Assembly (NCBI GenBank): GCA_053919585.1
Contig: CM132789.1
DNA length: 64,000 bases
Source: Euprymna scolopes
Lineage: Eukaryota
Direction: 5' to 3' (one strand)
Part shown: in pieces, positions 1 to 52,954 of the stretch
Layout: the number at the start of each line of letters is the position of its first letter
How positions within the stretch are numbered: position 1 is the stretch's first letter
Translations under genes and position numbers: made by a program
Notes under the pieces: generated by a model
Databases searched by the model: none
What the model saw: the letters and a program-made list of their open reading frames with translations, nothing else
Told to the model about the DNA's origin: nothing

Positions 1-262
1 GGCGATAAGATCAAAGTGTAGTATCTGTTCCGACAGATGCTGCAAGCGATGACTAGCAAAGACCATATGTGGGGGTAACCCCACATATCTGACCTTGGTC
101 ACTGTAGGGGCAACCCTTCATACCAACACTTACTAATCCAGCTCCCATTTCCCACCTCTCGGGAGCTGGTCCCCCCCTTTCCCTCCCTCCTCCCCCTATC
201 TCCACATTAAAAAACGGCCTTGTGCCTAATTTGCTCAGTGGGGAAGCAAATAAATCCAACAG
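1..262 (+). mobile_element. U2 snRNA-headed structured short element, copy 1 (5' end at or near the window edge)
   Basis: 6-30 TAAGATCAAAGTGTAGTATCTGTTC matches the invertebrate-type U2 5' segment; several hairpins follow; 3' block 199-254 is homologous to 24430-24489. Confidence 0.75.
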
Positions 263-3411: not shown

Positions 3412-4714
3412 GTAGCTTTTATTTTTTCTTTATAAATTTTACTTACTGTTTATAAAATGGACAGCTCTTTTTATTTTATCACTGTCATCAAGTTTTGAAA
3501 TTTAAGGTGCTGCAAGTGCCCTATTCTCTGGGGTAGACAACGTCTCACGTCTGTTTTTTATGCTGTCTGATCCATAGGATTGGCATTAGTTAGATTGCAG
3601 TCAAATCACTTATTACTCAAGCCAGGTCTTTCTCGGTCTAATATGCTATGACTCTAATATCTGCAATATCCAGGTATGTGATAGCGTTAATGCAAGAGGT
3701 GGCATGTATGGCCAAACTATCATGCACCATGCATTTATAATTCCACTACTAAAATTTTCCTTCATCATTTTATTCTTGCTTAATAAAAAATGGTATATTT
3801 TGGTATAAAAATTAAACAAACTATTGAATTTCATTTCTAATTACAATCAAATCAAATATTCTCTCTTTATAAAATAGAGAAAGGAATTTATCTTCTTTTC
3901 TGTTTTATTCTAAAATAGTTCAGAAAATTTTAGAATCTGTTGTAAAGAATTTAAAAACTAAACGAACAATGTTATTTATTTGAGGGGAGGGGGAGTTCGT
4001 GTTCAAAATCCACTTCATATTAAAAAAAGTAATTTTGTCAGTAAGCAAAGAGGGACTGCCTCAAAGAAAAAACAAAGGAAGATAACTCAGCAATAATTCA
4101 AATTTGCAAGATCAACCTTGTAATGCCTATAATTTCCTATTAATCGTGTTAAATCATTTAAAAATGATTTAATTTAGAAAAATATAACTACTTAATCAAT
4201 TTATGTGATTTTTAAAAATCTTTTCGTTCTGTTGCAGATATGTACCTCATCATAATTATTTTTTTGTATTTTTGTTTTCTAATATAGGGAGAATTCTGGG
4301 CGACCACCCTTTTTAAAAATAAATCTGTTGTAATATCTCTTGTAAAGAGTAAAAAATTAAAAGTAAAAAATAAAATAAAAAGCCATAACATTGGTGCAAT
4401 TAGAATTACATTTTGAATTTGGCAATTTTTTATACGAATGTGACATTAGAATGCTCCCTCCCAAAAAAAACTTTTGTAAAAATGGTAAACAAGTTTTTAT
4501 ATTTATACAATAAACAACAATCATATTCCACCTACTTTACTCTAGATTGAAAAAATATGATTTTCTTGAAAACTCTTAAGTGATCATAAAATTTTTTAAA
4601 CGATCACTTTTAACAAAAATGATAATGCAAATAGTTAAGTATTAATAAGTTATAAAGTTTTTTTGGTTTTTTTTCGTGTTAAATACCAAGAAAAAAGAAG
4701 TTAAGTAACCAACA

Positions 4715-9477: not shown

Positions 9478-12400
9478 GATCTTATTTTGGATTATTTGGA
9501 TTCTTCAGTTTACTGTTTTCATCTTGAGTGTTATTTTCACAACATTTCAATTGATGTAACCTCCAACCTTCTTCAGGAATATTTTTGTTGAACTCAGGAA
9601 TCTGCACAGAATTTGAAATAGAACCGACCTTGTCGAGTGGGCATTAGAATACCTTCAATTCGGCCATTTGTTGATTGTGGGTGGCGATTCATGATGCTTA
9701 AGGATGGGATTCTGGTGATTGAGCAGATCATGCCCAGGACATCATAAAGATATAAACTGCAGCATACCACTTTGGCCTTTACTTGGGCTAGACAGGGGGT
9801 TGAATAGATCTGATTCAATCAATCAGTTGGTCACATCTAGCTCTAACTTTCCACATTATATGATAAACTGATTTAGTAAGCCGTGGCTGAAGGGTCAAAC
9901 TACTTGACAGATAATGAACCCAACACGGCAAACATATTTTTTCTAAAAAGAAACTTAGAAGTAAATGGAAGAACCACGGATGCTTGGATCCACCAAAGGG
10001 TAGAGTATACCCTTCCTATATCCCTATTGTGTTGGGATGAATGGATTTTCCTCTCAACATCTCCCACATAGGGCTCTGAGGGTAGTGGGGAGCAGGAGAG
10101 ATGAACAAAAGCACAAAATTATGTACAACAATCAGCCTCATAAAAAAAAAAATCATTCTGAAGTTACGGATCTTACTAGTTCAGACCCAGAAATCGAAAT
10201 GAAATATAAAAGCACAAACTTCCCAACATACATAGTGATGGAAAACTCTGTTAAAAAAATATCAATTTTCAAAATAGAAAATAATATTCTACAAAAGTAT
10301 CAAAAAAAAAAAAAAACTAAACAACAGCACAATACTAATTGAAATAACAAATAGAAAACAAGCAAAAAAAAAAAAGCAGAAGAGCTACTAAAATGAAAAC
10401 AATTTGAGAATACAGCAATCAAAACTTAACCACATAAAACACTAAACTCGAGCAAAAACAAAATAAAAAGTTCTGAACTATCACTATGCACAATGGAAGA
10501 AATGAAGGACACTCTCAAAACACAAAATGTTACAGATGTACAAAGAATACAAAGAAGAAAAACAAATTATATTCACTAATACATAATCCTAACTTTTGAT
10601 ACCCCCCCTCCTGCCAAATTCTCCAAAATATCAAAATAGGATATCTGATAATAAACACAGAACCATACATCTTTAACCCTCTAAGATGTCACAATTGTCA
10701 AAGATCTAGACATCATTGTGACCAATATACACCCCTCCCTCAACATGCATAAGATGCGTGGAGGGAAAATAGATTCACACAAAGAATGCAAAAATAAATT
10801 TAAATGCGTTAATTGCAATGAAACTCAATGGGAAAACTCCAAAAATTACCCTATTTGGAGAAAAGAAAAAGGGACCCTCAAAATAAAATGCACCAAAAAC
10901 ATTATGTTCTTGAAAACATTAGAAAACACCAATTATGCAGAAATAAATAAAAGAAACCTATCAAATACTAACATACCCAAATCACCATACAAAAGCAATA
11001 AACCAATGTGAAGATGTCACAAAACTCTTAAATCAAATGAAAAATTTACTAGAATTAAAAAAAAAAACACAAACTAAATTAATAGTGAAAACAAAATCTA
11101 CCCAAATAAAAACCAAAATATGACTTAACATCGGATTTAATAAAAAACCAAACCAAAAATATACACAAAACCACAAACTGCAACTACTTCTACACAAACA
11201 GTTATCCCCATGAAATTGGAGGGGGGGGGGCGAATCACACCAAAAGCAATAAAATCATCACCCAACAACAAAGAACCTAAATCCAAAAGAAGGAAAACAT
11301 TGATCTGTATCAATTATCTAAAATAAAAATTCCTTTCCAAAATCAAATTCAGGCAATGGATACAGAAAATGAAAGACCAGACCCCCCCCCTCCCCCCCCA
11401 AAGAAATAAAAAAAGTAAAGAGAAAAACATCCACAACATTACACTACAACTACCCACATCCTTCATATTACTAAGAGACTTTAATTTCCACGGCCGAATA
11501 TGGAGTGGCAGTGAAATCAACCAAAAGAGCAAATTCATCAAAAGTTTCATAAACAAAAATAACCTATGCATTTACAACAACCAATCGTCAACACTTGGGT
11601 AAATATTCAACAATAGACCTAACCTTATATGATTGGTCCGTCCTAATGGACTTTTCATGGTCAACACACAATGATACGTGTGCAAATAACCACTTCCTTA
11701 TGATCCTAGAAGGTCTGAATACCAATCCAAAAGACAAAATTCCAAATTGGAACCTCAAAAAAGAAAACTTGAACAAATTTACAACAATTTGTTCCACAGA
11801 ACTAACTCCCAACTCAAACACCAAAAACCAAGATCAAATTACATACTTCACCATAACAATAACTTTCATAGCAGAAAAATGTATCCCTGAATTTTCTAAA
11901 TGCACCAAACATAACTATTCTTGGTTCAATGAAGAATGCCGAAAAGCTATCAAACTATGCAAAGCTGTTCTACACAAATTCAACGTGCATCCAACAGCAG
12001 AAACTAAAATTCTTTCAAAATATGCAGAACCAAAAGTATAACAAATAATTAAATAATCTAAATGTTCTACATAGAAAAAAATCATATCCAAAATTAACTC
12101 TAACACAAAAACATAAACTGTGTGAAATACGATCAGAAAAATTGCTGTCAAAAACACAACTACCCCTCTCAAACATCTAAACAACAATACAAAAGTAACT
12201 GACCCCAAATTGCCAATACATTTGCCCAATACTTTGAACAAAACTCTTCTGCTACAAACCACAATAAGAAATTTCAGAACTTGAAAAACAATAATGAAAA
12301 GATAAAACTGGACTTTCACTCAAAAATAAAAAAATACAATTTCCCTTTTACCTTCACTGAATTACAGAACACCTTAGTTGGACCTGACAACATATACTAT

Positions 12401-14627
12401 GAATTCCTTAAACAATTTGCAGATCCTTCTATGAAATACCTACTAAAGATCATGAACAATATCTGGATTAGTGGAAAAATACCCAATCTCTGAAAATAAG
12501 CAAATATTATCATCCTCCATACCCAAAAGTGAAAAAGACTTATCAAACCCCTCCAGCTATAGTCATCTGCCTAACCAATTGTTTATATAAAACCGTAGAG
12601 AGAATGGTCTAAGACTAATTTGGACTCTAGAAATCAACAACCTACTAACTGACTTTCAAGCTGGTTACAGAAAAGACGAAGCACAGTTAACCACTTGATC
12701 CACTTAGAAACAGTTATCAGAAATGCTTTCATCAAAAAAGAACATTTAATTGCATTTTTTTTTTTTTTTTTTTAAATCTCAAAAAGGCATTTGACATTAC
12801 ATAGCAATATGGTATAATGTTAGAACTTAACAAATTCGGACTCAAAGGTAAGCTACCAACATTCATGGAAAATTTTATATCCACCCATTTCTTTTTATGG
12901 GAAACCCCTTTCTGAAATCTACAAGCAGGAAATGGAAATACTACAGGGAAGTATATTATCAACCACACTTTTCAATATCCAAATGAGCAGCATTGTCAAA
13001 ATTCTGGATCCCAGGTTGGAACCTTTTCTATATGTCAATGATTTTCTCATTTGTTACAAATCAAAACCTATCCACACTATTAAACAATGTCTCAACAAGA
13101 TTAGCGAATTGTTCAACATAAATGGGTTCAAATTTTCCCAGACAAAAACTAAGTGTTTACATTTTTGTCAACAAAAGCTACATCTTCATCCTTTTCTCAA
13201 ACTTAATAATAAAGAAATATCCACAGTTGAAAAACATAAATTCTTAGGCATAATCTTCAACAAAAAATTCACATGCAAAGCACATGTAAATGACCTCAGA
13301 ACTAAATGTAATAAAATAGTACAGTTAATGAGAGTAATAACCAATACAAACTTATGAACACATAAAAATCCTACTAAAAAATATACAAATCGCTTGTCAG
13401 ATAGAAGCAAGACTTTGCCAGCTTCATTTATGGATCTGCAAGGAAATTTTATTTAAGAGAATTGGAAACAATTCACAACCAAGGACTCAGAATGGTTCTA
13501 AGAATTTACAGAACTTCATCAACAGTATGTATGCAGAAGCCTTCAAATACCAGTCTCCTTGAGACAAGAAAGAGTAGTACTTCAGTACTACATTAAACAC
13601 ATACTGTGTCTTCACCCCAAAATAAACCTCTTCAACAAAGAAAAAAATGCCATAAAAACCTATGGAACACAAACAGAACACCTACTAACTAGAAAATTGT
13701 CTTATAGATAAAAACGTTCACAAATTCAAATTTCCAGAAAACCCTCCATGGTTACTAAAACAACCAAAACTCATCCTTCACTTAACAAAATATTCCAACT
13801 CTGATATGCACCCTGCAATCTGTATAGACAATCTCAAGAATATATTAGGACAATACCCAAACTGGACATGCATATACACAGATGGATCTAAAGACCTGAA
13901 CAAAATCAACTGTATTTAACAATATCATACTACAAAAACGCTTTCCAGGCAACAGCTCAATTTTCAATGCTGAAACAACAGCAATAGAATTAGCCTTGGA
14001 TATCAGCCTTTAAACCAACTCAAACAAGTACATAATACTTTCAAATTCCTTATCAGTTTTAATGTCACTAAAAATCAAAGACTTAAACAAGCCCCTAATC
14101 ATAAATCTTTTACAAAGAGTTAATTATGTCTCCCGAAACACAAACATCATCATAAGACTCAAAAATTTTTTTAAAATGATCACTAGCAATACAAAAGTAC
14201 CCTGTACAGACTTCTAAACAACAAAAATATCATATCTAAATGGCAGAAGTCATAGAATTCCTGCAAAAACAATAAACTCTATCAAATTAAACCCAACCTC
14301 AAAGAAAAAACAAGACAAAATCTCTAATTATAAGATGGCAAGAAGGGAGTAGTAATAGCAAGTCTCCAAATAAGATACACTGCTATGACACACTCGTACC
14401 TACTAAAGGGCAAAGAAGCACCAATCTGTATCCCATGTCCAGAACCGTATATCATAGAACATATTCAAAGATCTCCAACAAATATGAAAAAAATGTTACC
14501 AAAGAAACAATCTAAAAGACCTTTTCCGCAATCTCCTAATAATACAAATTAACAATCTTCTAGAGTTAAAAAGAAAACACCTAGCATACAACTAACACTT
14601 ATCAAAGTGTAATAATCACACTAAGAG

Positions 14628-14675
<48 letters not shown>

Positions 14676-18309: not shown

Positions 18310-21300
18310 ATCTGTGAGCGGCCGGATCAGTCGGAGTACGAGTGCAACCCCTAAAAGTCATCAAAAGACGACTACTCTGAACTCTTCTGACTTTCATGTA
18401 AGTCAGAATAGTACTGCCTCCAGCGGCTCACAAATCTTGGCCGATACTACCCAGGAGAGTAATCATGTATTGCCATCGTCTCGGGTAGAAACTGCTGAGG
18501 TGCACAGTGAGAGTTCCTTGTCAGGCAGCCGCTCCTTGGGATCACCAAAGCTGGATTCGGCTCGCAGCCATAGTCAGCCAGCCATCACTTTGGAGCAGGA
18601 TGGGAACAGGAATGACCACCAGGCTCCGGGCAGTTCTCCACACAACACTGACAACAAAGTGGAGTCCAGTGATCATGTCCATGGCAAAATTGCCAAATCG
18701 GATTTGAATGGTATATCCGTTAGCTTAAGTTCTGATAGGCAGCAAACATTGTCAGCCAATCAAAATGCAAATGACAATGCTGGAAATCATAATTTATCTT
18801 CAATTTTGAGTACATCTAGTAACAGTGGTAAAGAGAAGGGTCCGAAAAAAAGTTGCGATTCTAGTGACACCTCCACACACATTCTGAAATCGGTACATTT
18901 TATGAGTGATGTTATCGATAAAAATGGTAATGCTGATAGTACTGATGACATTCCACTTCAGACAATTCCCCGTAGCAACAGGTTTGATAATATCTCTGAC
19001 ATAGGAGAAGATTACGATTACGACTACCAAAGTGACGATGACGATAGTGACGATCAGAGTGATGACGATGACGATCATAGCGATGATGAAGGCTCAGTTG
19101 ACAAACTCGAGTATAACGTGTCTTTAGAGGAAATAGCTAGTCATGAGGACATAAATAGGCGTGATAGTCCTCTGACTATAGAGAAACTATCTGCAGAAAG
19201 GGATCAGTTAAGGGGTCATAGGAGAATGGGAAGTAAAGAGCGTGTACTTACATGGAATATAGCAGAGATGTCTTTAGAAGGAACTAGTGGGGAAAATGAT
19301 TGGGAAAGACTAGACAGTGGAGAGATTATTGATATGATAGAAAATGATGGTCCTAGTGATTGGGATGGTGGAGAGCTTTACCTAAATTTAGACACAAAAG
19401 ACTCTAAAGGCATAGAGGATGAAAGTGATGAACTTTCTAGTTCTCCTGCTGTGCAGGATGTGATGTTCAGTTTGGGAGTCCCTACTGATGAATCTAGTGA
19501 ACTTATTACGGAGACAGACACAAGTCCAACTGCTGATGAGATGGTCGAGGAAGGTGGAGAAGATTCAGTTCCCTTTGAAAACATTCCACCTTTGCCTCCA
19601 AGTTCGTCTTTTAGTGAAAGTTCAAAGGTTATAGATGATCTGTTGCCCAAATCGGATTCAGGTATATCTGGTATCGAGGACAGCAGAATAAGTTGCAGTT
19701 TGGAGACGGAGGAAGAAGACAGGTTGCACGAGATTCTTAGACAAGTTGATTCCGGTGAAGAACTGGATAAATCACCTGCTGAAAGGGAAACCCTCAATTT
19801 TCCTTCATCAAATCGAGATTTTAACTCTGAAAATAATCGAAAGGATGACAAAATGCCCCGGCATGCAAAAAAATCAAAAGAAAAACCCGATAGCAACCGA
19901 CAGAATCTTGATAACGATACAAGCAACAAGCTGCTGTCGTCATCCCAACCTTTTGAAGATAATAAATCCACTTCTCATAATGTCTTGAATAACATTTCCA
20001 ATTTGACTAATGAAAATAAGCTGAATAAATACAATAAACCCAATAGTTTTGTCAATGGCAGTGACCTTATCAAAGACATTCCATATATATTGCATCGTCG
20101 ACTCAAAATTGATAAGGAGTTGAAAGATGAAACTGAATTATTTGCTCTAACAGAAACTGAATGCCACAATGTCCAAACAGTTGAGAGCAAACTATCTTCT
20201 TCTCTTCTGCTTGAGCAGCTCAATTTGAACAATGAATGCCAATCTCAACGGAAGTCAAGAGGCCCATCACCTAACCGAAGATCCCCATCATGCAGAACTC
20301 CTAAGGATCATTCTCCGGCCAGTCCCCGTCGATTTGAATTAGTCAGTTACAATAAACTTCCTCCTAAAACAAGTTATTCCAGTATCGATGATACAACTAG
20401 CCCTTCATTAGAAAAAGAAATTTTAGAACAAATCCAAAAGCGGGCCCAGAAAGAAAATAATGAAAAAAATAAAAAAAGTGAAATCACTGCTGGTAAAGAA
20501 GACAATGAATTGGTTGACACTGTGGTAGGGAACACAGAATTTGTTACCTACCGAAAACTTCCAGCTAAGGACAGTTTTTCCAGCCTTGACCATACAACCA
20601 GTCCTACAGTTGAGAGTGATATAGAGAAACATAGACTCACAGTAGGTCAAATGTCAGTTGAGTCTGAACATCTAAATGATAATGATGCAGAGATAAAGTC
20701 AAGTGAACTGCCAGAGCAATCAGTGGACACTTCAGTCCACCTTGTAAAAGGATTAAGAGGTCTACCCGAACCAGCCAGTGTGGCATCTATCAAGAGAACG
20801 ATTGTTGAAGATGAAAATTCTGAGGTTAAATCAACCGAGGTCTCAACTCCAAGCCAACAAGAAATTGATTTATATCTTCTCTCTTCATCTACTGCTGATG
20901 ATGATGATGATGATGATGAACAAATAATTGATACTACTACTACTACTACTACAGCATTATTACACCAAGAGCCTAGATTTGGTGGACTGTTATTGGACTT
21001 AAACGATGACTGTAATAGCAATGAGGCAGCCAGCAATAATGACAATGACCGCAATCACTTCAACAACGATCCTGCTTCTGTTGCTGCTCTGATTCTAAGT
21101 CAAGATATTGACACAGAACCGAATGAGCGCAAGATAACTTTTAGCACCTTCAAACCACCTCCACCATCGCCAGGGTCTTTGATTGGAGATGAGTCTGAAG
21201 GGAGTTCAAAGATAAATTCTGCTAACCCGAAGAGCAGCAACAGTCTTGTTAAGCAAGATTCAGTTGTGTCTCTTGGTAAACCTTTGACCACAATTACTGA

Positions 21301-22285
21301 AGAAGAGAGCACCACAGATTCATCCAGAGCACAGTCCGATGAAATGACCCAAAAATTGTCCGGCTCTTTGAGGCGACGGAACCTTTCCTGTGAATTTGCA
21401 CTGCCACGACGACACAGTGCTACTGATGATGCAGATGATTCTAGTTTAGCCGACAGCCAGTTAGAAGATGAATCATTTGATGTGCACGATTTATTAGAGC
21501 CGTTGGAACATCTTCAAACAGATGATGATTCAGAAGAAGACTTTAATGGAAGTAGTACGTCTTTTACAAGAGATAGTGAAACGAGTGAAGCATGCTCAAA
21601 CTCATTTTTGGCCTCCAACCGAAGGGCATTGTCCCATCCAGCATCAAACAGTTCCAGTGAGAGCTCCTCATCAGGTGAATCAGATTATGAAAATAGGAAA
21701 AAACTCTTGAACATCGATCCATTAGCTGAACTCGAGAACCTTGATATGACAAAATTAGAATCGAGCGACGATGATGAAATTACAGAGAATAAAACTTCTG
21801 ACTACATGTGCACATTGGCCCCTGCTGCTTCTACTGCAGCAACTGTGTCAGAGTACAGAATGACTGCCAGCTCTCATCATGATGATGACGATGATCCTAA
21901 AAATGCTACAGCTCCTAAATTGGACGCTGCTCGATGTGTAAAGGCAGGATCTCATTCTAAAAGTACATTTGAAATAGAACGGACTCGGGTGGTTGAGCTT
22001 AATTTGGAGATTTCAACTGAAAATCCATGTGGAAGGTCAATTTCTATGGAAAGCACCTACAAGAGAGTCGTCTTTTGTGAGTCCTCCTCAGATAATACAG
22101 ATTTCCAAGAAACGGATAGTTCTGCAGCTGTTAGCTCTCCAGATAGTGCCCAACTGTCCCCTCTCACCCCAGACAACGCAGTTGGTGGAAATTCAGAAAA
22201 AGAACAACGAACAAGTGCTGTTTACCAAAATCCGTATGCAGAAACTGTCCTCAGGCAAGAATTGAACTTCTCACCCTCACAATGA
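18310..22285 (+). CDS. FARP: FARP exon after the FA domain, read through as a giant terminal exon (~1320 aa acidic/Ser-rich low-complexity tail); the canonical isoform must leave it at an internal donor
   Basis: Polypyrimidine tract + ttttcag| at 18309, phase 2 in frame with the previous exon (R-SVSGRISR...); 1323-codon ORF with higher GC than the introns; TGA at 22283-22285; AATAAA at 22707-22712. Candidate internal donors include 18398 (gtaagt, phase 0) and 18711 (G|gtatat, phase 1, compatible with exon 47035). Confidence 0.85.
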
Positions 22286-24138
22286 GCAAAACACAAGGAA
22301 TTTTCATTTATTTTAATTTATTTGATAAAATGTCACAACAAAATCACACAGATTTTACACATTCCAATTTTTTATTTCGTTTTTTTTTTCTCCCTGAGAG
22401 TCTTTTTTTCTTTTTTTCTAAAGAAATATTTTCAGCATATTTAGAAGACTTCCCCCTTTTTTTCTCACTGTCTTTTAAATTTCTCTATAAAACACAAACT
22501 TAACACTTGTAATTTCACATCAAGCTACAATGTATTATAAGGTTTCAGATTGTATATAGAGTAAGAATAATACATTTGTGCAAATGTTTGTCAATAAGTT
22601 TCATTCTACTTACATGCAATTTTGGATTGATTAATATAATCGGTGAAGCTCTCCCCATCTTATGTCCATTTTACTTATAACATTTTAATGATTTTTCATT
22701 TTGAACAATAAATATCTGATAATTTATTTAAAATCTAGATCAAACAATATTTATAAAATTTTTAAGTTTCTATAATATTTTGTGTGACAGAAAATCTAAG
22801 TCTGCAATGGTTTGCATTTTTTTATTTTTTTTTTGTCTTAAATCTGTAAATATTTTCTCTCAAATAACCTGATTAAGATGAGTAACTATTTCTGTTAATG
22901 AACATAAACAGTCTTGCTGCTCCATATAATCAAACGATTAGCTAACACTTACAATCTTATTTTCTACTATTGTTGTTTGTGTTTTTATTCAAGAGGAACA
23001 TTAATTCCTTGAAATGTGTTAAGATTCAAAGATTTCGTTCAAATTGACTCAAAGAACCTATACATGCGAGGAATAATAATGAATTTCTCTTATATAAACT
23101 GATTTTAAAAAACACCCCACTTAAAAAAAAAAGCAAAAGAAAAGAAAACAATTATTTCAAGCTGTTAAAATGATAAATTGAAAACCAGTTCACTTTATTA
23201 TGAAGTAATTTTTCAAATTGACTTTCCAAGAAACATAATTGTTATTTTTGTAAGCAAACTGCAGTTACATTTAACATGATTTTCTCTGACTGTTTAATGT
23301 TTACACAAATAGCAGCATGCTCATGATTCTTTGAATGTTGATAGTTAAGTGACAATTAATAAGAAATCAGATTTCTTAATTGTCAGTAAATAGACATTTT
23401 TTGCTCACGTATAGTTTTAAGCTAATCTTTTAATATTTTTATTTGCTTCATTTCAAAAGTTTGTGAAATTATATAACTCTACTATGCAAAGAGATTCTTC
23501 ATCAATTACATTACTCATCACCTGTATCCTAAGAAAGTGTATATTATAAACAAGAGAACTTAGGGAATATGACCATTTTGTATGGACTTTCCATTGCCGA
23601 AGTCAGATTCTAGTTGTTTCTGACTTTTGATCTTCAAGCCCCCTTTGCTGCTTATCTCTCTTTCTCTGACTGTGTTTTCTCAGTCAGTCGAGGGAACTCA
23701 TTTGCTAACAACAAAACAAGAGTAAATGCCACAGTTTAGGAGCAGAACTTTCCAATTCAAATTTTCTTACATAAGTGCAATTTATTTAATCTTGGCAGTT
23801 TCTATTTTTTACTAAGGTTGAAGTTTAATTCAATCGTTAATAATAAGCGGATGTTAAGAATGGACGACTCTCAATTATTGGTGCTTTTTTCTGACGTGAT
23901 GGAGAAGGAAGTTTTTCATCACAAATGGCTGTTAAAAAATGTATATCTTTTCTTTACATATGGACTGAGAGGGAAAGGAACATTCTTTGAATATAGACAT
24001 ACTAACTGTTCAGATCTCATTAGATTTTAATACATTCTATTTTAATATAGATCGGTTTAGTCTACTTTAAATTCATTTCTTTTATAAACTATTAAACTAA
24101 TTGTTTCATTTGTAAGGATTTATAAGGAAAAAGAAACC

Positions 24139-24728
24139 AGTTCTTGCCCAGAATTCCACTTATTTAAAAAAAAGAAATAAATAAAATGTATGATGACAAA
24201 ACGAAAATATCATATTCCAAAAATTATGTAAATTGATCAAGTACTTTTATTTTTATAAAGAAAATTATTTTTTAGCAATTAATGAAAATTTGTAGACATT
24301 ACAACATCGGGACAAGATCAAAGTGTAGTATCTGTATCTGTTCTCCAGATGCTGCACTTCTATTTCTTGTTCTCTTTCGGTGGAGGAGAAATCCTTCACG
24401 ACTGAGACAATTTTTATTTTTGTACCTTTTCTCCACGTTAAAAAACGACCCTGGTGTCTAACTCTGTCCCGTGGGGAGGCATAGTAAATAGGTACAACAT
24501 AAATCTGACAAGTTTTGAATTATTGTTGAGTTATCTCCCTTATTTTTAAGATTAAAAAATGACGGGCAAGAGTCACTCTTCTGATACTCATAAAATTTGA
24601 TTTATTTAAAAATAAAATCACTTGATCAAGTTATGTGATATTTGGAATATGATATTTTCGTTTTGTCACATCATACAGATTTTTTTTAATTTTGTTTTTT
24701 ATTATAGGGTGAATTCTAGACAAGAACC
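24139..24728. mobile_element. MITE family B copy 1 (~110-bp TIRs, consensus end GGTTCTTGTCCAGAATT), containing the U2-headed insertion
   Basis: Inverted arms 24139-24260 and ~24605-24728; flanks AAGAAACC / AAGAAATC. Confidence 0.85.
24308..24492 (+). mobile_element. U2 snRNA-headed structured short element, copy 2, nested in a MITE
   Basis: AAGATCAAAGTGTAGTATCTG head; flanked by TACAACAT at 24300-24307 and 24493-24500; sibling MITE copies show a single TACAACAT at this site. Confidence 0.85.
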
Positions 24729-27700
24729 AAGAAATCTTATAGATGTCAACTATTTCTTCCAATCACAATTATTTCTGAATCCCTATTTTTTATCTTTTAA
24801 TTGGGATTTCTAAATTGCAATTTCTCTCTTAAACTTTACATAAGTTGGATAGCAAAGATATTTGAAGTAATTTCTAATCAATATTTTTATTCAGTAAAGA
24901 TCATTAAGAAAATTTAATGAGAATTTATATTGTTTGGCTATAATGATCTCTCATCTTTTTCGTTAAAGCCAGATGTAGAAGGTGTACTATCAGGTGTTGA
25001 CTGCTCATGAACTATCTGTGATTAAATCTCTCTTTTCCAACAAAGACACAGTTTGCTTTCTGGTCTTCTTGTATCAGGAATCTTCTTACAGAATTCTTCC
25101 CCACTTTTACTTCAGACTGACTGATTTACAATGACATGCATTATTGTTAGCAGATATATTATCTTTTAATTCTCTGTGCCTGATAAACACCTGATCTCTC
25201 ATTTTTTTTTTTTTCTTTAAATGTAAATATTTAAAATATGGTGTGTCAACAGGAAAAAAGTATTCCAAAAACGCAAATGATTTTTGAAAACGGACATGAT
25301 ATTCATTTGCCTATCACCCAACATCATTTTTATTCAATCATCATCACCACCATCATCATCGTCATCATCATCATCATGTTTAAGTAACAAACAATTGGTT
25401 CAAAGATTAAAATAGCTGTGGCTGTTAATGGGGCCTGGGCAGGCCATTTTTTCCCCCTGCCCCTTCACATCTCAGTATTTATGCCTGCCTTGACACCAGA
25501 GCTGCGGTTTTGACTTGTGATTTCCATGTCAATTAAAAAAAAAAAAAACTCAGTTTCCTGCCAATGCTCATTTGGAGCGACTTCCTGTTAGTCGCATTTA
25601 TGTTGTAGATTTTTCTATCATAAACAAAAAAAAAACGAAAATTCCTAGATATATTTGTAATTTCATTTTTTAAATTCCTATCACAAAAATCTCATTTTAT
25701 TATTTGTTACTTATTCTGATTATTAGAAAAAAAAACATTTTAAGTATTTTTAAATACTTACAAAAACGTTTCTATTCAATCAATTAATGGTGCAATCTGT
25801 GCACATTTGCTGAGCATTTATTTTCAAAGACAGTTGCACTAGAAATAGACTCAACTAGAATTTTAGTAGAATTAAAGCGTTAAACATATCACTTGAGAGA
25901 GTGGAAACTTGAATCAGTTTTTCCTTTCATTTGAAAAAAAATGTCTTCTTGAAAAACGTTTCCTTCTCATAATTTCCTTTGCCAATTCCATTTTCATTAT
26001 CATTGTCTTTATCGCTGCAGACATTATCATCATCACCATATAAGTTGCTTTATACTTATATAATTTATTGCTGGATTTATGTTTCATAAGAAACACTTTC
26101 CCATTATCTTGATAACGCTAACATATGAAGTAGTTAAAAGACAAAAGTTTATTGTTTTATTACTTCACTCTTACTTTTTAAAATTAAAATTATCCCTGAC
26201 CCCATTTCTCTAAAAATTTATGATTTTTTTCATCATCTGTTAGTCTTGACTGATGATCTCAACTGCCTTATTTGTTTCTGCCTTTATCTAGATTTGATCC
26301 TACATCTCGGACCTTAGTCTTTTTTACCTCTCCTGATGAACTACTACTCGATTTTGATCACTCATTTTCTTACAAGTTTGTGAATTTACTTCGATACATT
26401 CCTATTTTTAATCAGTCACATTGTCGCCAAAGATTGTCTGGCAACTTCTTTCTCTTGGCACCAAATTCTGAAATATTTTTTTTATTTCTGGTCCTTTGAA
26501 TCACTTTTTATATTTTGGCATATAATTTCATAAAAACATTCCATTATTATGATTATCAGTTTTTTGCATTCGTGATAAAAAAAATTGTCTTTTATATTTG
26601 TTATAATATATTAGCAACTTAGTCAAACATTCCAACTATTTTTTATGATTCTGTGTTCAAAAAAAATATTCCAGATTCCACTTTCTGATCATTGCAATTT
26701 TTCCTCTTTATTTTTCTCAAATTTATAATTAGTGCTGTTTTGTTGGCTTCATATTTTGCTTTTAGAGGAAGTAAAAATAACTGCTATATTTTAAGATAAA
26801 CTATAAATTATAAATTTGTTAGAATTTATGATTTTTTTTTTCCTTACAGTTTTTTTTCTTTAAAAAATGTTTTGTGTTTAACATTAGGGATTCATTTTGA
26901 TTTAAAAATAACTTAGAACAAAAAAATGGTTAATAATAAAATATGCTTTTTTCAAAATAATTTCCGTTCGTTTTTAAAATGGAATCATTTATCTCCACGA
27001 TTTTCAAACTTTTCTCTTTGATATTTTTCTAATATATACTCATAAGGGCATTGACGTTAGGCAGATATTCTTGTATAAACCAGATGACAGATTTGTCTAA
27101 TACAAATCACTTTTCATCTTATTGTCTACTCCATGAATACTTTTATAAAGTTTATTTTTCACTTACAAACATGGCCTCATTTAAATAATCTTCCTGATAT
27201 ATCTCCAAGAAAGCTTTAAACTTTCATTCCCCAGCTATGGCTAAAAAGAACTTTTTGTTTACAATGGATAGTTTATCATAGGTGATTGCATACTCAACAT
27301 TAAATAGCGCATAAAAGGTTTGATTAATCAAATTATAAAAATAATGCTAGAAATTGTAATGATAGAGCTAGATTTCATTGGTCAAGGAACAATGAAAACG
27401 AGTATCTATTTTTATTAGTCATGCTTGATAAGGGAGTTATTTCAGTGTTTCTTTTTATCAGATTATATGGACTTAGATCTTATTCATATATACCCCCCCC
27501 CCATTTTATTTTAATTAACAAGCACAGACAAAGTGCATGTGGTGGTTACAATAGATATACTAAGTTAACAGATCATTTTTTTTTTTTTAGCACTTCCCCA
27601 TTTTTTTCTTTAACGTTAAGATGAACATCAAAATTAATAAATTGTCTTCATATCTGAGTAAATTTGATCCAATGCAATTCTCATTTTATTCATTCTCAGA

Positions 27701-34160: not shown

Positions 34161-34349
34161 NNNNNNNNNNNNNNNNNNNNNNNNNNNNNNNNNNNNNNNN
34201 NNNNNNNNNNNNNNNNNNNNNNNNNNNNNNNNNNNNNNNNNNNNNNNNNNNNNNNNNNNNNNNNNNNNNNNNNNNNNNNNNNNNNNNNNNNNNNNNNNNN
34301 NNNNNNNNNNNNNNNNNNNNNNNNNNNNNNNNNNNNNNNNNNNNNNNNN
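34161..34349. other. Assembly gap (189 N)
   Basis: Run of n. Confidence 1.
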
Positions 34350-35194: not shown

Positions 35195-38100
35195 TTACAG
35201 CTCTCTTTTTTGAGTTTGCAAGTTATGAAAAGAATGATCTAATTTTCCTGATTGAAGCACCTAACACACATGTATATGATTAGAAAATGTATGTAATCAC
35301 TAAATCTTGCAAGATCTGTTCTTGCTTCATTTTGCGGGTTACGATTTCAATTGTTCTTCAAGAACATATTCATGATTTTAGTTAAATTCACATTTTATTT
35401 TACTCTGGACACATTTTTTTGTTTTGTTTTAGCAATCTTTTGACACTTTTTTTTAATTTAAATTTTTTTTTTCAACACATGTTTTTGTTATGATGTGTTG
35501 ATTATCATGTGCAACTACACAAAAATTCATGCCTGTTTTATTTGTGTATTTTGTTTTTTTTTTGTTTTAAGCTTTTATTCTGCCTTTTTGTTGCAAATAT
35601 ACAACCACAGCTCAATGTATATCAGTTGATTTGTAAACATTATGAAGGACGCATGAAATTTAAATCTGCATTCTTTTATTTCTAGTCAGTAATGAATAAA
35701 ATAGTAAATAAAATTCTCAAAATAAAAAAAAACATTTATATTAAATTTAGTCACTTATATAGGTTTTCTACATTTTTCCCCCCTTGGTTATATGAAGAAG
35801 TTTCTTTATAAAATGAATTGCCAATTTGGTGAAAAATATTAAGAAATATTTTTTTACATCAATAATTTAGAATTTTTTTCTTTTTTTTAGTCATTATATA
35901 TTTTAATCTTCATATGTTTAACCATCACATTTTTGTTTCTGACTTATTTTTACTAATATTTACATCTATGATATGCAGTTTTATTTCGTATGATTCTATA
36001 ACTTATTGTTAACAAGACCACTATTTTAATTTATTTTCTACATTATTCGTGTAAATTGTTTTTAGTTACTTTGAGCTCCTTTGTTTATAGATTGTTTTAT
36101 TTTTTTATTTTTTGCTCAAATTGCATTTTTTTCTTTGTTTGCCTTTGTTTTTTTATTTTCAGTTTTGTTTGTATTTTCACTTGACCCATCCACCAAAAAG
36201 GAAATTAGCAAATACTTACAGATTCCTTGAATCTTTTTAATTTGATAAAATCATAGGTCCGACATAAATGATTTTAATTTTGAATTGTTTATAAATTTTC
36301 TAACAAAATAACTCTTTCCCAAATGAATGCTTTTGCTTCATGATGAATTTAAATTATTGTTAGGCCTCGCATGATTATTTATTAAAAAAATTAAATTTTG
36401 GAATATTATATTTTTGTTTCCTCATGTGTACGTACATCACACAGATTTATCTTTATTTTTTAATATAGAGGGAATTCTGAACAAAAAGAGATTTTTTTTT
36501 TTTCTTGAGGAGGTTTTGCATAATTATACGTTCTTTATACTCTCTCACTTCCACCACAAGACTGCAACAACATTCTGCTCACTTAAAGACTTAAGCATAA
36601 TAAAATTTGAACCATAAGGAAATACAAAAAAAATTATGTTGACACTGAAAATCTTAAGTTCTATCATTATAAGACTCTTTGATTTATGCTTGTTCTGGCC
36701 TAAAGATTTTTCAATCAAAAATATGGTGCTAATGCAAGTATTTTGGGATCTGAACTCTTTTCTGCATTAAAATGGTTCAAGGATGTATCAGTATTATGTA
36801 CCTCATTTGGGATGGAGATTCCAGCTTTTTAAAATAAATCTATATTATGATCCCTCTCCCATAACAACCATTTCAAAAGGTATTTGCAGAATGGTAGCCG
36901 ACTTGGTTTGGAAAACCAGTATCTGGTCACTCATGTAAGTATTGACCAGACAATATCACTTCAGTTATCTTAGGGGAACTGATATGTCAACCTGATCATA
37001 CAATTAGAACTTCAATTACAAAATGGAAGCATTAATACATTTAAAATTTTATTTTCTTCATTACAGTTCATCATTTAGAACCAAAGTAAATTTTTTTTTT
37101 AAATATCTTTTTTTTATGTCGAAACTTAAAAAAAATTTTTTAATTTACTTATATAAAAAAAGGTCCTATTTTCTCCCTTCCATTCTTTGTTATTCATTTT
37201 ATTTTGTTTCTAATTTTGCAATGCTTTTAATAATATGCCTCTCTCTCTCTCTCTATCTCTTTCTTCATTATTTCCCCTTTGTTCTCTGTTGTTTTACACC
37301 AGAAAAGTTGAGAAATGTTTTTCATCTGTGTCGACCTCTCCCTCCATCCACAGTCACCACCTGTGCTTTTTGTTATTTTTTATCTGTTGTCTCTCACTTG
37401 CTTCCACCTGTGAATGGTTTTTGTTGTTTGATTTTTTTTTCTTACACCTTTCCTTTATTCCCTAAACATTAGTGGAAGGGGCTACATGACAGAAAGTGGG
37501 TCAGTTAATCAAAAATGCTTTCTTTTAGAAAAATTTAGATCAAATATGATTCAATCTATTAATTTTAATGCAGATCTCTTTTTATATTCCAGTCAACTTG
37601 CTGACTTTAATTCTAAAAGTATTTTTAATAAATTCTTTGTAATCTATTATTTCATTATTCGTAATATTAACATTAATGCAGTCTTTGTAGATACTTTGTT
37701 TTATTATTTTGATCATAGTTGATTTTGAAGAACAAAAGCTTTTACATGAAGTTTTTAATCGATTTAAAAAGAAAATAAAAACATGTTCCTGTTAATACCA
37801 TTCCTCTAAAGATAACAAATTTGAAAAGATCCTAAGGATCAGCTCTGCCCCCTAGTTAACCATTTCCAACTGTTGTAACACAACTTCTAACATCTTATAG
37901 AAATGCTCTTCAGATTCCTGATTTTCTCTTTACGGTTTCTATCTTATCTAATGTTAATGATGTTGCCATGGAAAAATGCTTTAATTCTTGTTAATTTTAC
38001 TTTTCTTTTACTAAAATATTAACAAATTTTCTTTGACTAACATATTCTGTATATTTTATATTAATTTTATTTGCTTTAATTTTAAAAAATTTATATTAAT

Positions 38101-47218: not shown

Positions 47219-47926
47219 GTAAGAAATACACTGTTTATTTACATAAACGTTTTCAGTTTTACTAATTCATTCTGTAGATATTTTGCTTTTGTTTGCATTT
47301 TTTGTTTGTTTCTGCTTCTTTGCATGACAACCTGTAAAGATCCAATGTTGCCTAGTAATATTTATACATTCATTTTTAAAAGGTTGTTGGTTTTTAGGTT
47401 TAAAATAAGCAGTTTTAATGATTTTTTTTTTTTCAAACAGAACAATCAGTAGTATATGTGTAATATAAAATTGTTTCTTTTTTATTGCATAATATTTTAA
47501 TGTCCTCTGTTTGAAACTTTATTGTTAATGTTTAAAAATAATTGCCACTTGAATGTATTATGTAAATTTGTTAAGATTATTTTGCAAACATACAAACAAA
47601 CATGATACAAGGTTACATTTCTATCACTCTGTTTTAATTTCGTGGTAAATTCAATCATCAGATGTATTTCTGCCTTGCATGACCTTATGCATGTGAGCTT
47701 GCATTTAAATGTAAACAATGTGTGGAATAGGAAACTTCTCGTGATGATTAGATTCACCATTAAACTTTTTAACATTTCAGTTTTAAGACAAATCCTTTTA
47801 AATATTATTTTTACAAAACTCTATCTGAAAGGATATCAGGCCCTTTGTGTGTTTCTTTGCAAGATTTGCTATCTTAGATCGAATCTGTTCTGAATCAGAA
47901 GTTGTTTTTTCATATTATTGATACAT

Positions 47927-48337
47927 GGTTCTTTAGAATTCGCCCTATATTAAAAATCAAAGAAAAATCTATGATATATGTATCTATGACAAAATGAAAA
48001 TATCATATTCCTAAAAACACGTAAATTGATCTAGTAGTTTTGTTCTCATAAAGATCATTTTCATACAATTAATGGGAATTCATAGACATTACAACATAAA
48101 CCTAGTAAGTTTAATTTACTTTTGAGTTATCTCCCTTGTTTCTTGGGATTATTTTTAAGATTACAGCACAAGACAGTCATTTCTCTCTTGGTCATAAAAT
48201 TTGATTTTCTTAAAAGTAAAACAACTTGATCAATTTATGTGATTTTTGGAATATGATATTTTTATTCCAGCATGGGTAAGTACATCATACAGATTTTTAT
48301 TTGTTTGTTAATATAAGGGCAATTCTGGACAAGAACC
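47927..48337. mobile_element. MITE family B copy 2 (empty-site form)
   Basis: Same TIRs; internal CATAGACATTACAACATAAACC...GAGTTATCTCCCTT with no insertion. Confidence 0.85.
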
Positions 48338-49079
48338 GATATATCCTATAATTTCTTTAAAAAGTTAAATTTTTCATATTAACAAGAAGATTAAAGAATC
48401 TCCTTTCTAAAAATAAATTAATTAAAATGAATCTTTAGTCTATAAAAAAACTTACTATCACTTAGAATATATTCTTTCTTGTTTAAAAATGTTAAATTGA
48501 ATATCTTTAATATTTGCAAAGTATTGCTTGTTTTTTTTTATGCATGATTTCTTTTTTTAATTTTCAAAATCTAAAACCATTGCAAATTTCCTTTATGCAC
48601 ATAATGATTTTTTCCCCGACAGTTTTTATCCATAGCCAAATATTGTAGACCACTCAGTGTAAAACCCGTGTAGCTCATCTTAGCTGATCATTTACATTAA
48701 TTGGCTAGATAAACCAAACATATATACCTGTGCAAAAGAAACAAAAATCCAATACTAATGTGCCTTGCTTTTCTTCTTCCTTGTTTCTTGTGAGAGGTCA
48801 TTATCTTCAGATATTAACCTGGTTTTGCTGTTTTCCCTACTTCACACGACCTTCCTTCCAAAACGAAATAATGGTATACATCCCCCTTAAGCATGCAAGA
48901 TATGAACAATCATCATTCAATAGAGAGATGCGACTCCTTCCCATGCAGCATTTGGATGATGCAATATGACCAGCACCAACGCCACAAGATGCACAATCTT
49001 CTCCTCTTCCTCCGCCTTCAACTGAAATAATATAAAAAGGTTACAAGGATAGATATCTTCACTGATTCTTTTTTTCCAG

Positions 49080-50530: not shown

Positions 50531-52954
50531 CTTAAATAAGCATAGTGATCTATAGGATTATTTTTATCAAGGGAAACATTATTTGAATATGTATTTTTTG
50601 GATTATCAGTTTATGATTTCCAAGAAGATGTACATTATATTTTTTATTATCCTCATCATGTATTTCATATTCACAAAGTTTTGACTGCTCTACTTTACAG
50701 CCTATTATTTCAGATGATTTTTATTATTCTTGTATTTCATACCGAGCCAAGAATCAACCTGACAGTCTAGCACCAGACCTTTCTTTGTCACGATAAGTTA
50801 TGGGCCCACTCTGACCTCAAAGGTGCACTCTTTTGAACATTACTTCCTCTTTTTGGGGAAGGGGTTAATTATTATTGATTATCTGAGGCACTCTTATTGA
50901 GGTATGCAGATGGGTCTGTTCATGGCTGTATTTGTACTAACCAGAGTGCCTCTTTGGGGGAGCTGGCTTTCTGCACCTTTCAGCTTTGTACCATCTTTTT
51001 CTCCAGTAAATAACAATCTTATGTAAATTTTAAACAACTTTTCATTTTACTTGTTATTTACCTTTACTCATATTGCAGTTTTTTATTTTAATATTTTAAT
51101 TTCAGCATGTATTATTATTATTATTATTATTAGCCATCACAAAGTGTGTGTGCAATATTTTTATTTCAAAATATAAAATTACTAAATTCGAAAATAATAT
51201 TGAAAATGTAACTGAAAAAATGTTTCCTTTCATAGATTCAAGTTAAATTGTAGCAGTACATGCTGTATGGATGGTTGAAGTGAAGTTTGGATATTTTCTA
51301 ATGACACCATCCAACATCCAGATGTCTTGACTTTTCTTGTTTGCCAGTTATTAACTAGGAAGATCAGTTGGTTGTCTTTTTCCATTGTGACCTCTATTAA
51401 AAGTCTTCACTTCACATGAACCTGTGATATTTGAACTCCTTTCTCGTGTGACCAGAGTATGAATGTATCATGTGGTTTAAAATTAGGTAAAAATTGGTTA
51501 ATTGGTTAAAAGATATTCTCAAGTGAATTCTCTCTGGAGATTGTTAGCTCATTCAATGATGAATGAAGGAAAGAAAAAATGTTTTCATAAACAAAATGCT
51601 CTTGATACATGTTTGGTTCTTTTATTATACTTGTCTGACACCACCACTTCTCTTCATTGTCACAGTTTTGTTTAGTGATTGCTGTACAAATAAGCTTCTT
51701 TTTTTAAAGCAGGAAAGACATAAGGAAACGTTAAGTGAATGTTTTCTAAAAGCTTTTATTTTGAAGAGAATTGACTTAGGCTCATGAGAGAGAGACTAAT
51801 GTTCTCTTAGCTAATTTAGTATTTAGTTACTTTGAATAAGTGCTGCACGAATAGATATATTGAGGTAATGTTTTGCAATTAGCGATTATCAAAGTTTCTT
51901 ACATTATTGGCCAACTGTCTTATGCAATCTATGGCAGACTCATTGTTCAAAGTTTCCTTCGCATTGCTCCCACATAGACAAACTGATTTGAAAACCTTTG
52001 TTTTCTCTCGGTTTGAAAAACGTGGCATTATTCATCATCACTTACTCATACCTTTGTTTTATTGATGCCATTTAGCTTGGACATTACATGTAAGCCGTCT
52101 TTAATTACACTTTGGGAACGATTCTGCTTTGCAGATCTGAGTTAACATGCAGTGTGACCCTTGTAAAAATCCATACTAGTTAACTTAATTGCCACTGACA
52201 TAGGATCCCTAATAACAAAATGACTGATACAACATTCAAAGGAATAAGAACAATTAGTCCTTTAAAAATTCAAAATTTCTAGAAGGTTGCTATGAAGAGT
52301 CAAAATGTGAATATGACAGCCATGATGTGGATAATAGTCCAAAATATGTAATTTACACCATCTTAACCCAGAAATATCAAATATCACAATAAATGTAGGT
52401 TGTTCATAAAAGGAAATATCAATTTTGAGGAGATGAGTTTATTACTCAAGTTTTTTTTTTTGTGTAGATACACACAACATACACTTACATAAGTTTGGGA
52501 TTTGTTTTTCTGTTTGTTTTTTTTACTTTGGATCTGAATCTAATTCCTAGATATTTTGTCTGAGAAACGTACAGAAAAATATTAAATTTTGAGAAGATAA
52601 ATAATAAATAAAATGCAAAAGATGGAGGTGCAAAGAAAACCAGCTGAACATATTAAGACTGAAAAGGATGTAGGCCTGCTGGATCCCAAACGAAAAGGCA
52701 GGTAAGGTGAGGAATGTATACAAATTGTGATGTGTATGCAACCAATCACAAATAAGAGATGGTTCTAGAATTTCTTTGTCATTTTGTATTTATTTTAAGA
52801 TACTATCACCAATATATTATTTCTTATGTGTCATATTAATAAAATTGAAAGAGTAATTTTTTCTTTAAACATATTCAGTTTTCTTATTCCTTTTCCATTT
52901 GAAGTTTCATTATTTGCAAAGTATATAAAATCAGTAATTATGATTCAATTATAC

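What the first reader, a model, noticed from the sequence alone, without database searches (positions are those of the whole stretch)
24300..24500. Mobile U2-snRNA-headed element that masks its own branch-point-recognition sequence
Seen: a 185-bp insert (24308-24492) between perfect 8-bp direct repeats TACAACAT, while two sibling MITEs (~48090, ~53215) carry a single TACAACAT, so this is a real insertion with a TSD. It starts with AAGATCAAAGTGTAGTATCTG..TTC, the U2 5' segment containing GUAGUA, and then leaves the U2 sequence for CAGATGCTGCACTT. That arm can fold back over AAGTGTAGTATCTG as a 14-bp stem with two U-G wobbles, which pair only on the + strand RNA. A GTGGAGGA-GAAA-TCCTTCAC GNRA hairpin and an Sm-site-like ATTTTTG follow. 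There are no TIRs and no poly(A). Known: U2-derived SINEs (SINEU, crocodilians) and U2-targeting LINEs (Utopia, Keno) exist. Inference: an invertebrate family of structured U2-headed mobile RNAs whose antisense arm could hide the branch-point-pairing sequence, either protecting host splicing or acting as a switch.
Basis: partly seen in the sequence, partly recalled or inferred. Interest (0 to 1): 0.9.

Follow-up and report, generated by a model that had tools for sequence, protein, structure and literature searches.

The report
U2-headed short retroposon in a cephalopod
A 185-base mobile element that begins with a copied piece of the U2 splicing RNA has inserted into an older transposon in a squid/cuttlefish gene intron; it is probably a cephalopod counterpart of the crocodilian SINEU elements, and nothing shows that it affects splicing.

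Summary
A 185-bp insert (24308-24492) lies between two perfect TACAACAT copies. It sits inside an old palindromic MITE, and two sibling MITEs carry a single TACAACAT at the same aligned site. It is therefore a real insertion with an 8-bp target-site duplication.

A second copy lies at window 1-~258, cut by the window start. It shares a ~45-nt head and a ~60-nt 3' block, but its middle differs.

The head matches the U2 consensus from about nt 19 to 45, including GUAGUA. Neither copy comes near the Rfam U2 threshold (13.9 and 18.2 bits against 46). After the U2 piece comes an inverted partial copy of it, forming an 11-14 bp hairpin with two G·U pairs.

Both copies fold well as + strand RNA (z about -3.8) and less well as minus strand. 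A GNRA hairpin and a tail hairpin each keep one compensatory pair. There are no terminal inverted repeats, no poly(A) and no tRNA. The Sm-like site is in one copy only.

The host is a decapodiform cephalopod; the element lies in an intron of a FARP-like gene.

Best reading: a SINEU-like non-autonomous retroposon without a poly(A) tail. The "masking" function is untested and weakly motivated. I could recover no further copies.

The parts
24300..24307 (+). Left copy of the 8-bp target-site duplication TACAACAT
   Evidence: Sibling MITEs have a single copy at the aligned position.
24308..24492 (+). Copy B of the element, 185 bp, complete at its 3' end. Its 5' end may be full-length, or truncated with 6 extra nucleotides (CGGGAC).
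   Evidence: The + strand RNA fold is -58.6 kcal/mol, z -3.9, with 0 of 200 shuffles folding as well. The minus strand gives z -2.1.
24314..24345 (+). U2 snRNA-derived segment, about U2 nt 23-46, containing GUAGUA. It carries a 6-nt internal duplication TATCTG (24335-24340).
   Evidence: cmscan alignment to RF00004. Exact 22-nt identity with copy A.
24346..24359 (+). Antisense arm CAGATGCTGCACTT. It is the reverse complement of the U2 piece 24321-24334 with two A-to-G differences, which give G·U pairs on the + strand.
24380..24399 (+). GNRA (GAAA) hairpin, shared with copy A (loop GCAA). One compensatory pair, GC in one copy and AU in the other.
24431..24492 (+). Conserved 3' block. It has an outer 7-bp stem CTCCAC./.GTGGGGA, an A-rich loop, an inner 3-bp stem with one compensatory pair, and ends ..TAAATAGG without poly(A).
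24493..24500 (+). Right copy of the TSD TACAACAT
24120..24740 (.). Host MITE, a palindromic element with ~200-bp inverted arms. The insertion lies near the centre, between the arms. The window holds 5 family members.
1..258 (+). Copy A of the element, cut at its 5' end by the window start. It has the same head (U2 nt ~19-45 at 1-30, arm at 34-44) and the same 3' block (200-258), but a longer and different middle with extra GNRA-capped hairpins.
   Evidence: The + strand RNA fold gives z -3.7; the minus strand gives z -0.26.

Best explanation
This is a short non-autonomous retroposon (SINE-like) of a decapodiform cephalopod genome.

Its RNA has three conserved modules:
1. A 5' module made of a piece of U2 snRNA (about nt 19-45, including the branch-point-recognition GUAGUA), followed by a diverged inverted copy of that same piece, so the 5' end forms a stable hairpin.
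2. A small GNRA-capped hairpin, followed by a pyrimidine-rich tract.
3. A ~60-nt 3' stem-loop block that ends without poly(A).

Inferred mechanism: the + strand RNA is copied into DNA at a nicked target by the reverse transcriptase of a partner LINE that recognises the 3' stem-loop (a 'stringent' type of partner). This leaves an 8-bp target-site duplication. Copy B landed in this way in the centre of an older MITE, in an intron of a FARP-like gene.

The U2 head was probably acquired once. It could have come from a reverse-transcriptase template switch onto U2 snRNA. Alternatively it came from co-transcription of a master copy sitting inside a U2 gene; the U2 part ends 7 nt past the Keno/Utopia cut site at nt 38/39. 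The head was then inherited by both copies together with the inverted arm.

Shown: the insertion and TSD, two copies with shared ends, the U2 origin of the head, and predicted folding that favours the + strand. Inferred: the RNA intermediate, the LINE partner, and how the head was acquired. The hairpin is most simply a structural 5' module, or a by-product of an inverted duplication, and not a device to hide GUAGUA.
For: - Empty-site comparison and perfect 8-bp TSD.
- Second copy with the same U2/non-U2 junction, the same arm and the same 3' block but a different body. This is the modular pattern typical of SINE subfamilies.
- The U2 consensus is matched at every consensus position from model position ~19 to 45, with small insertions.
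- No TIRs, no tRNA, and no coding capacity with homologues.
- Both copies fold far better than shuffles as + strand RNA, and less so or not at all as minus strand.
- All wobble pairs in the head rod and the GNRA hairpin are G·U on the + strand.
- One compensatory GC/AU exchange each in the GNRA hairpin and the tail hairpin.
- Runs of five T inside copy B argue against Pol III, as reported for SINEU (PMC4494074).
- Precedents: U1/U2-headed SINEU and Tx1 LINEs with U2 heads in crocodilians, also inserted in a non-autonomous DNA transposon.
- ~1,300 U2-derived loci 'likely SINEs' in the giant squid (PMC6962438).
- L1-Tx1 LINEs belong to the coleoid repeat set (PMC8967140).
Against: - Only two copies, both from one 64-kb window, and the 5' end of one is cut off. 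No further copies were found in about 43 kb from two contigs of one related-species assembly (ERZ21867824), one of them the orthologous locus, or in about 61.8 kb from three other ENA assemblies of unidentified source species.
- No partner LINE sharing the 3' block is in the window.
- An 8-bp TSD is also the hallmark of hAT DNA transposons.
- Two compensatory pairs among two sequences is thin evidence.
- The origin of the inverted arm is not explained by any standard retrotransposition step.
Confidence: 0.62

Rival explanations
1. One reading: the antisense arm has been selected to hide the U2 branch-point-recognition sequence of the element RNA, either to protect host splicing or to act as a switch.
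For: The hairpin is in the minimum-free-energy and centroid structures of both copies. Its arms are 33/33 identical between copies while the tail is 42/52 identical (Fisher p 0.006). Its two wobble pairs form only on the + strand.
Against: - There is no covariation: all 11 shared pairs are invariant.
- The excess conservation is carried by the U2 half (22/22). That could equally come from re-copying or gene conversion from the invariant U2 RNA. The arm alone (11/11) is not significantly better conserved than the tail.
- The U2 fragment lacks everything needed to build a snRNP, so an unmasked GUAGUA hexamer would hardly interfere with splicing.
- The Sm-like site is not conserved.
Confidence: 0.07
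2. It is a non-autonomous DNA transposon (hAT-like, 8-bp TSD) that happens to have captured a U2 fragment.
For: The TSD is exactly 8 bp. There is no poly(A). The element is small and structured.
Against: - There are no terminal inverted repeats. The ends CGGGAC... and ...AATAGG are not complementary, and the only match is an internal 7-mer 20 nt from the 3' end.
- Folding and wobble pairs are asymmetric between strands, which points to an RNA stage.
- The TSD fits the hAT nTnnnnAn target preference (from my own knowledge) at only one of its two fixed positions.
Confidence: 0.1
3. These are independent chimeric retrocopies made by template switching of a LINE reverse transcriptase from some RNA onto U2 snRNA. 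They are not a self-propagating family.
For: snRNA chimeras of this kind are known for L1 (reviewed in PMC4494074). Only two copies were seen.
Against: - The two copies share the same U2 end point, the same inverted arm with the same two G substitutions, and the same extra A, yet have different bodies. This points to inheritance from a common master, not two independent jumps.
- A jump onto U2 should copy it to its 5' end and should not add an antisense U2 piece.
Confidence: 0.1
4. It is an ordinary U2 pseudogene or a divergent U2 variant gene.
For: There are weak full-model cmscan alignments to RF00004. Copy B shows a U2-like order of hairpins and a U-run.
Against: - Scores are 13.9 and 18.2 bits against a gathering score of 46, and there is no hit at gathering level.
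- Only nt ~19-45 truly match. Stem I is missing in copy B, stems IIa and onward are replaced by unrelated sequence, and the U-run is absent in copy A.
Confidence: 0.03

Closest known systems
SINEU (U1/U2 snRNA-headed SINEs of crocodilians; Kojima 2015, PMC4494074)
   Same: - Both are short non-coding retroposon-like elements whose 5' region is a fragment of U2 snRNA that need not start at U2 nt 1.
- Both have internal T-runs that argue against Pol III.
- Both are flanked by TSDs.
- Both are found inserted in a non-autonomous DNA transposon.
- Both show modular subfamilies with different bodies.
   Different: - SINEU has a 3' poly(A) tail. This element ends in a conserved stem-loop block without poly(A).
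- This element adds an inverted copy of the U2 piece, forming a 5' hairpin, which is not described for SINEU.
- The host is a cephalopod, whereas SINEU was reported as absent outside crocodilians in 2015.
- No sequence comparison with SINEU consensus sequences was possible.
Utopia and Keno, U2-gene-targeting LINEs (Kojima and Jurka 2015, PMC4640811)
   Same: Both are associated with the same stretch of U2. Those LINEs cut U2 between nt 38 and 39. An insertion with a 7-bp TSD would leave U2 1-45 upstream, exactly where the U2 similarity ends here. Keno belongs to the Tx1 clade, which is present in coleoids.
   Different: This element has no ORF, is 185-260 bp long, and copy B is inserted in a MITE and not in a U2 gene. 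No U2 sequence follows its 3' end.
Stringent-type SINEs whose 3' stem-loop is shared with a partner LINE (for example the cephalopod Ceph-SINEs with RTE-derived tails; PMC5786205)
   Same: Both have a conserved 3' stem-loop without poly(A), a variable body and a modular build.
   Different: Those SINEs have tRNA-derived Pol III heads. Here no tRNA-like head is detected and the head is U2-derived. Similarity of the tail to any LINE could not be tested.

Membership tests
SINEU | 5' region derived from U1 or U2 snRNA | tested here: met
   cmscan aligns copy A positions 1-30 and copy B 24314-24345 to the U2 consensus at about nt 19-45. Every consensus position matches, with small insertions.
SINEU | Short (<500 bp) non-coding interspersed element flanked by target-site duplications | tested here: met
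   Copy B is 185 bp with a perfect 8-bp TSD, checked against empty sites in sibling MITEs. No homologous proteins were found.
SINEU | [quoted passage not shown] | tested here: not met
   Copy B ends ...GTAAATAGG directly at the TSD. Copy A has no A-run either.
SINEU | High-copy family with a shared structure (retrotransposition unit) | tested here: inconclusive
   Two copies in the window share the same junctions. No eukaryotic genome collection was searchable. There were 0 copies in about 43 kb from two contigs of one related-species assembly, ERZ21867824.
SINEU | Mobilised by Tx1 LINEs, with which it shares target preference | not testable with these tools
   No partner LINE is in the window. 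Only one insertion site is known.
U2 snRNA gene (Rfam RF00004) | Score at or above the gathering threshold (46 bits), with stems I-IV and an Sm site | tested here: not met
   No gathering-level hit. Scores are 13.9 and 18.2 bits.
Classical Pol III SINE (tRNA, 5S or 7SL head) | Head derived from tRNA, 5S or 7SL with an internal promoter, and no internal Pol III terminator | tested here: not met
   ARAGORN finds no tRNA-like sequence in the window. No Rfam 5S, 7SL or tRNA hit lies in the head. There are two TTTTT runs inside copy B.
hAT-type MITE | 8-bp TSD plus terminal inverted repeats | tested here: not met
   The TSD length fits, but there are no terminal inverted repeats.
Utopia/Keno | Reverse-transcriptase ORF and site-specific insertion in U2 genes at nt 38/39 | tested here: not met
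   The element has no ORF, and copy B is inserted in a MITE.

The most novel reading that the evidence does not exclude
The element could be a family of structured RNAs that engage the U2 machinery.

Both copies lie in the sense orientation in introns of a transcribed gene. The arm CAGAUGCUGCACUU is complementary to the branch-point-recognition region of real U2 snRNA. The cis U2 mimic and the arm could therefore form a switch that either exposes a U2-binding decoy or hides it. In a cephalopod the perfect ancestral duplex would also be an ADAR substrate. Both arm differences from a perfect complement are A-to-G on the + strand, which is the signature that editing followed by retrotransposition would leave.
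Probability: 0.04. Interest if true: 0.8.

Novelty: new variant of a known kind. Interest (0 to 1): 0.4.

Why it matters
If a genome-wide survey confirms it, this would be a second, independent lineage of snRNA-headed short retroposons, in molluscs as well as crocodilians. It would differ in its tail type, a stem-loop in place of poly(A).

That would show that heads taken from Pol II snRNAs are a recurrent solution and not a crocodilian oddity. It would give a concrete explanation for the unexplained excess of U2-like loci reported in squid genomes. It would also add to the poorly annotated SINE complement of decapodiform cephalopods.

The self-complementary U2 head would be a useful handle on how such heads are acquired. 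The possibilities include template switch, co-transcription from a U2 gene, and fold-back synthesis.

Tried and rejected
- Rfam at gathering level over the whole window gave nothing. Low-threshold hits other than U2 (mir-544, mir-5856, ceN53, snoR31 and others) are weak hairpin or AT-rich matches, and I treated them as chance.
- Exact-pattern scans for head plus arm in the metagenome, prokaryote-genome and viral collections returned only unrelated bacterial perfect palindromes. I allowed A or G at the two wobble positions, and that is what let these palindromes in. The tail pattern gave 0 hits in viral contigs.
- I tried to reach other copies through translated ORFs of copy A: an exact look-up, a word-indexed search and a full HMMER search (which returned only a Gly-rich low-complexity hit). 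All failed.
- I tried to sample related genomes through the FARP exon and the LINE RT fragment. This identified the host lineage and an orthologous locus, but found no further copies. The Sepia pharaonis gene was too long to fetch.
- I tested whether the degraded LINE at 10.0-14.6 kb is the partner. Its 3' end is unrelated.
- I considered a hammerhead or retrozyme. There is no Rfam support.
- I considered a resemblance to the Ceph or CORE domain (CCTTGG in copy A). Only a 6-mer matches, so I did not pursue it.

Full report
**Observation**

The window sequence at 24300-24500 reads TACAACAT, then a 185-bp insert, then TACAACAT. The surrounding ~600 bp is a palindromic MITE with ~200-bp inverted arms, and the window holds five members of this family.

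I aligned the MITE's left and right halves with the siblings at ~47930-48340 (+) and ~52960-53400 (-). Both siblings run straight through a single TACAACAT into the sequence that follows the second TACAACAT at 24501. This is an empty-site comparison. The insert is a genuine transposition event with an 8-bp target-site duplication, and it is younger than the MITE, which is only ~72% identical to its siblings.

**Anatomy**

The insert begins CGGGAC. It then carries AAGATCAAAGTGTAGTATCTG, a 6-nt duplicate TATCTG, TTCTC, and the arm CAGATGCTGCACTT. After that come:
- a GAAA-capped 8-bp hairpin (24380-24399);
- a T-rich tract with two T5 runs;
- a 62-nt 3' block that ends ...GTAAATAGG at the TSD.

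A second copy lies at window 1-~258 on the same strand, cut by the window edge. It shares the head: 22/22 in the U2 part and 11/11 in the arm. It also shares the 3' block (42/52 over the core). Its middle is longer and different, with C-rich sequence in place of the T-rich tract and additional GNRA-capped hairpins. BLAST and profile searches find no other copy or fragment in the window.

**Is the head U2?**

At Rfam gathering level nothing in the window is a U2 gene. With permissive thresholds the U2 model aligns to both copies at 13.9 and 18.2 bits, against a gathering score of 46. The aligned core is unambiguous. Copy A reads GGC-ga-UAAGAUCAA-a-GUGUAGUAUCUGUUC against the consensus from model position 19. 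Every consensus position matches, and cmscan flags the match as cut at the 5' end by the window edge. Copy B matches from GAUCAA onward.

Downstream of nt ~45 the similarity to U2 is not credible. So the head is a U2 fragment, not a U2 gene or an ordinary pseudogene. From memory, and not tested here, the extra A in AUCAAAGUG also occurs in some invertebrate U2 RNAs. It may therefore simply reflect the host's own U2.

**Structure**

As + strand RNA, copy B folds to -58.6 kcal/mol (z -3.9, 0 of 200 shuffles as good). Copy A folds to -79.9 kcal/mol (z -3.7, 0 of 200). The minus strands give z -2.1 and -0.26.

The head hairpin has 14 bp in B and 11-12 bp in A, and it appears in the MFE and centroid structures of both copies. 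In B it is extended by a further 9-bp stem between the 5' end and TCTTGTTCT. Together these look like a diverged inverted copy of the whole 26-nt head. All wobble pairs in this rod and in the GNRA hairpin are G·U on the + strand.

Across the two copies:
- the 11 shared head pairs are invariant, which is uninformative;
- the GNRA hairpin keeps 6 pairs with one GC/AU compensatory exchange, and its loops are GCAA and GAAA;
- the tail keeps a 7-bp outer stem, plus a 3-bp inner stem with one compensatory exchange.

The hairpin arms are better conserved than the tail (33/33 against 42/52, p 0.006). The signal comes mainly from the U2 half. Re-copying from the invariant U2 RNA could explain that as well as selection could.

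**What it is not**

- It has no terminal inverted repeats, so it is not a hAT-type MITE despite the 8-bp TSD.
- No tRNA-like head is detected, and internal T5 runs are present, so it is not a classical Pol III SINE.
- It has no ORF with relatives.
- The ATTTTTG 'Sm site' is present only in copy B.

**Host and context**

Window exons match a FERM-RhoGEF (FARP) protein. Identity is ~90% to FARP2 of Acanthosepion (Sepia) pharaonis and 95-100% in most exons to an unnamed transcript cluster. The window therefore comes from a decapodiform cephalopod. Both copies lie in introns, in the sense orientation of the gene.

The orthologous locus of a related species (L014, ~80% identical in the large exon) has neither the MITE nor the element. 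Four further ~20-kb loci from ENA assemblies (one from the L014 assembly, three of unidentified source species) have no copy. This sample is too small to say anything about distribution.

**Comparison with the known**

- Kojima (2015, PMC4494074) described SINEU in crocodilians. These are short retroposons with U1- or U2-derived heads that do not always start at nt 1 of the snRNA. They have internal oligo-T and poly(A) tails, insert preferentially in a Mariner-derived non-autonomous transposon, and are probably mobilised by Tx1 LINEs, some of which carry the same U2 head. At that time none were found outside crocodilians.
- Utopia and Keno LINEs insert in U2 genes between nt 38 and 39 (PMC4640811). 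The U2 similarity here ends 7 nt further on. This would fit a master copy inside a U2 gene with a 7-bp TSD, co-transcribed from the U2 promoter. That is inference only.
- The giant-squid genome paper counted ~1,300 U2-derived loci and suggested they are SINEs, without characterising them (PMC6962438).
- L1-Tx1 LINEs are part of the coleoid repeat set, and decapodiform SINEs are under-annotated (PMC8967140).

The element shares the defining head and the general build of SINEU. It fails the poly(A) criterion, and it adds a self-complementary arm and a stem-loop tail. I therefore file it as a new variant of that kind and not as a member.

**Mechanism**

The best-supported reading is a non-autonomous retroposon, confidence about 0.6. 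Its structured + strand RNA would be recognised through the 3' stem-loop by a partner LINE reverse transcriptase and integrated by target-primed reverse transcription.

The 'masking' idea is compatible with the fold, but no test supports it and it is weakly motivated. The U2 fragment lacks everything needed to form a snRNP.

One alternative twist cannot be excluded. The arm, not the head, may be the biologically risky part, because it is complementary to real U2. Its two differences from a perfect complement are both A-to-G on the + strand. ADAR editing of an ancestral perfect duplex would leave this pattern in an animal with very active RNA editing. This is speculation.

**Limits**

No eukaryotic genome collection, Dfam or Repbase was available. 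Copy number, the true 5' end, the partner LINE and covariation therefore remain open.

Noticed in passing
window 24120-24740, 47926-48349, 52954-53408, 4069-4301, 36392-36500: This is a family of ~450-600-bp palindromic MITEs with ~200-bp inverted arms, about 70-80% identical to each other. The U2-headed element landed almost exactly at the centre between the arms of one of them.
   Followed up: partly
window 18314-22285 (+): This is a 1323-codon open exon encoding a serine/acidic-rich disordered region with no Pfam match, inside the FARP-like gene. It is 74-75% conserved in a related species, as proteins of 1133-1378 aa (P0001, P0002). The canonical 1135-aa transcripts (P0003, P0005) use only its first ~135-170 codons. 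It therefore looks like a giant alternative exon extension.
   Followed up: partly
window ~10000-14640 (+): This is a degraded LINE with strong A-rich strand bias. It has an RVT_1 fragment at 12932-13357 and ends at a (TA)n run at 14630-14670. Its 3' end is unrelated to the U2-headed element.
   Followed up: partly
window 24308-24314 and 24465-24471: The first 7 nt of copy B (CGGGACA) are the exact reverse complement of TGTCCCG, about 20 nt from its 3' end. The chance expectation is about 0.01 within the element. This could be a 5'-3' panhandle, or extra nucleotides copied from the element's own 3' region at integration.
   Followed up: no
window 24333-24347 and 24421-24435: There is a 15-nt direct repeat (13/15 identical) between the loop of the head hairpin (TGTATCTGTTCTCCA, the end of the U2 piece) and the start of the 3' block (TGTACCTTTTCTCCA). 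It may be a trace of how the body was inserted between head and tail.
   Followed up: no
window 24506-24575 (+): There is a weak C/D-box snoRNA-like match (ceN53, 20.9 bits against a gathering score of 50, E 0.08) in the right arm of the MITE. It is probably chance in AT-rich sequence.
   Followed up: no
window 34161-34349: This is a run of 189 N (gap or masked).
   Followed up: no
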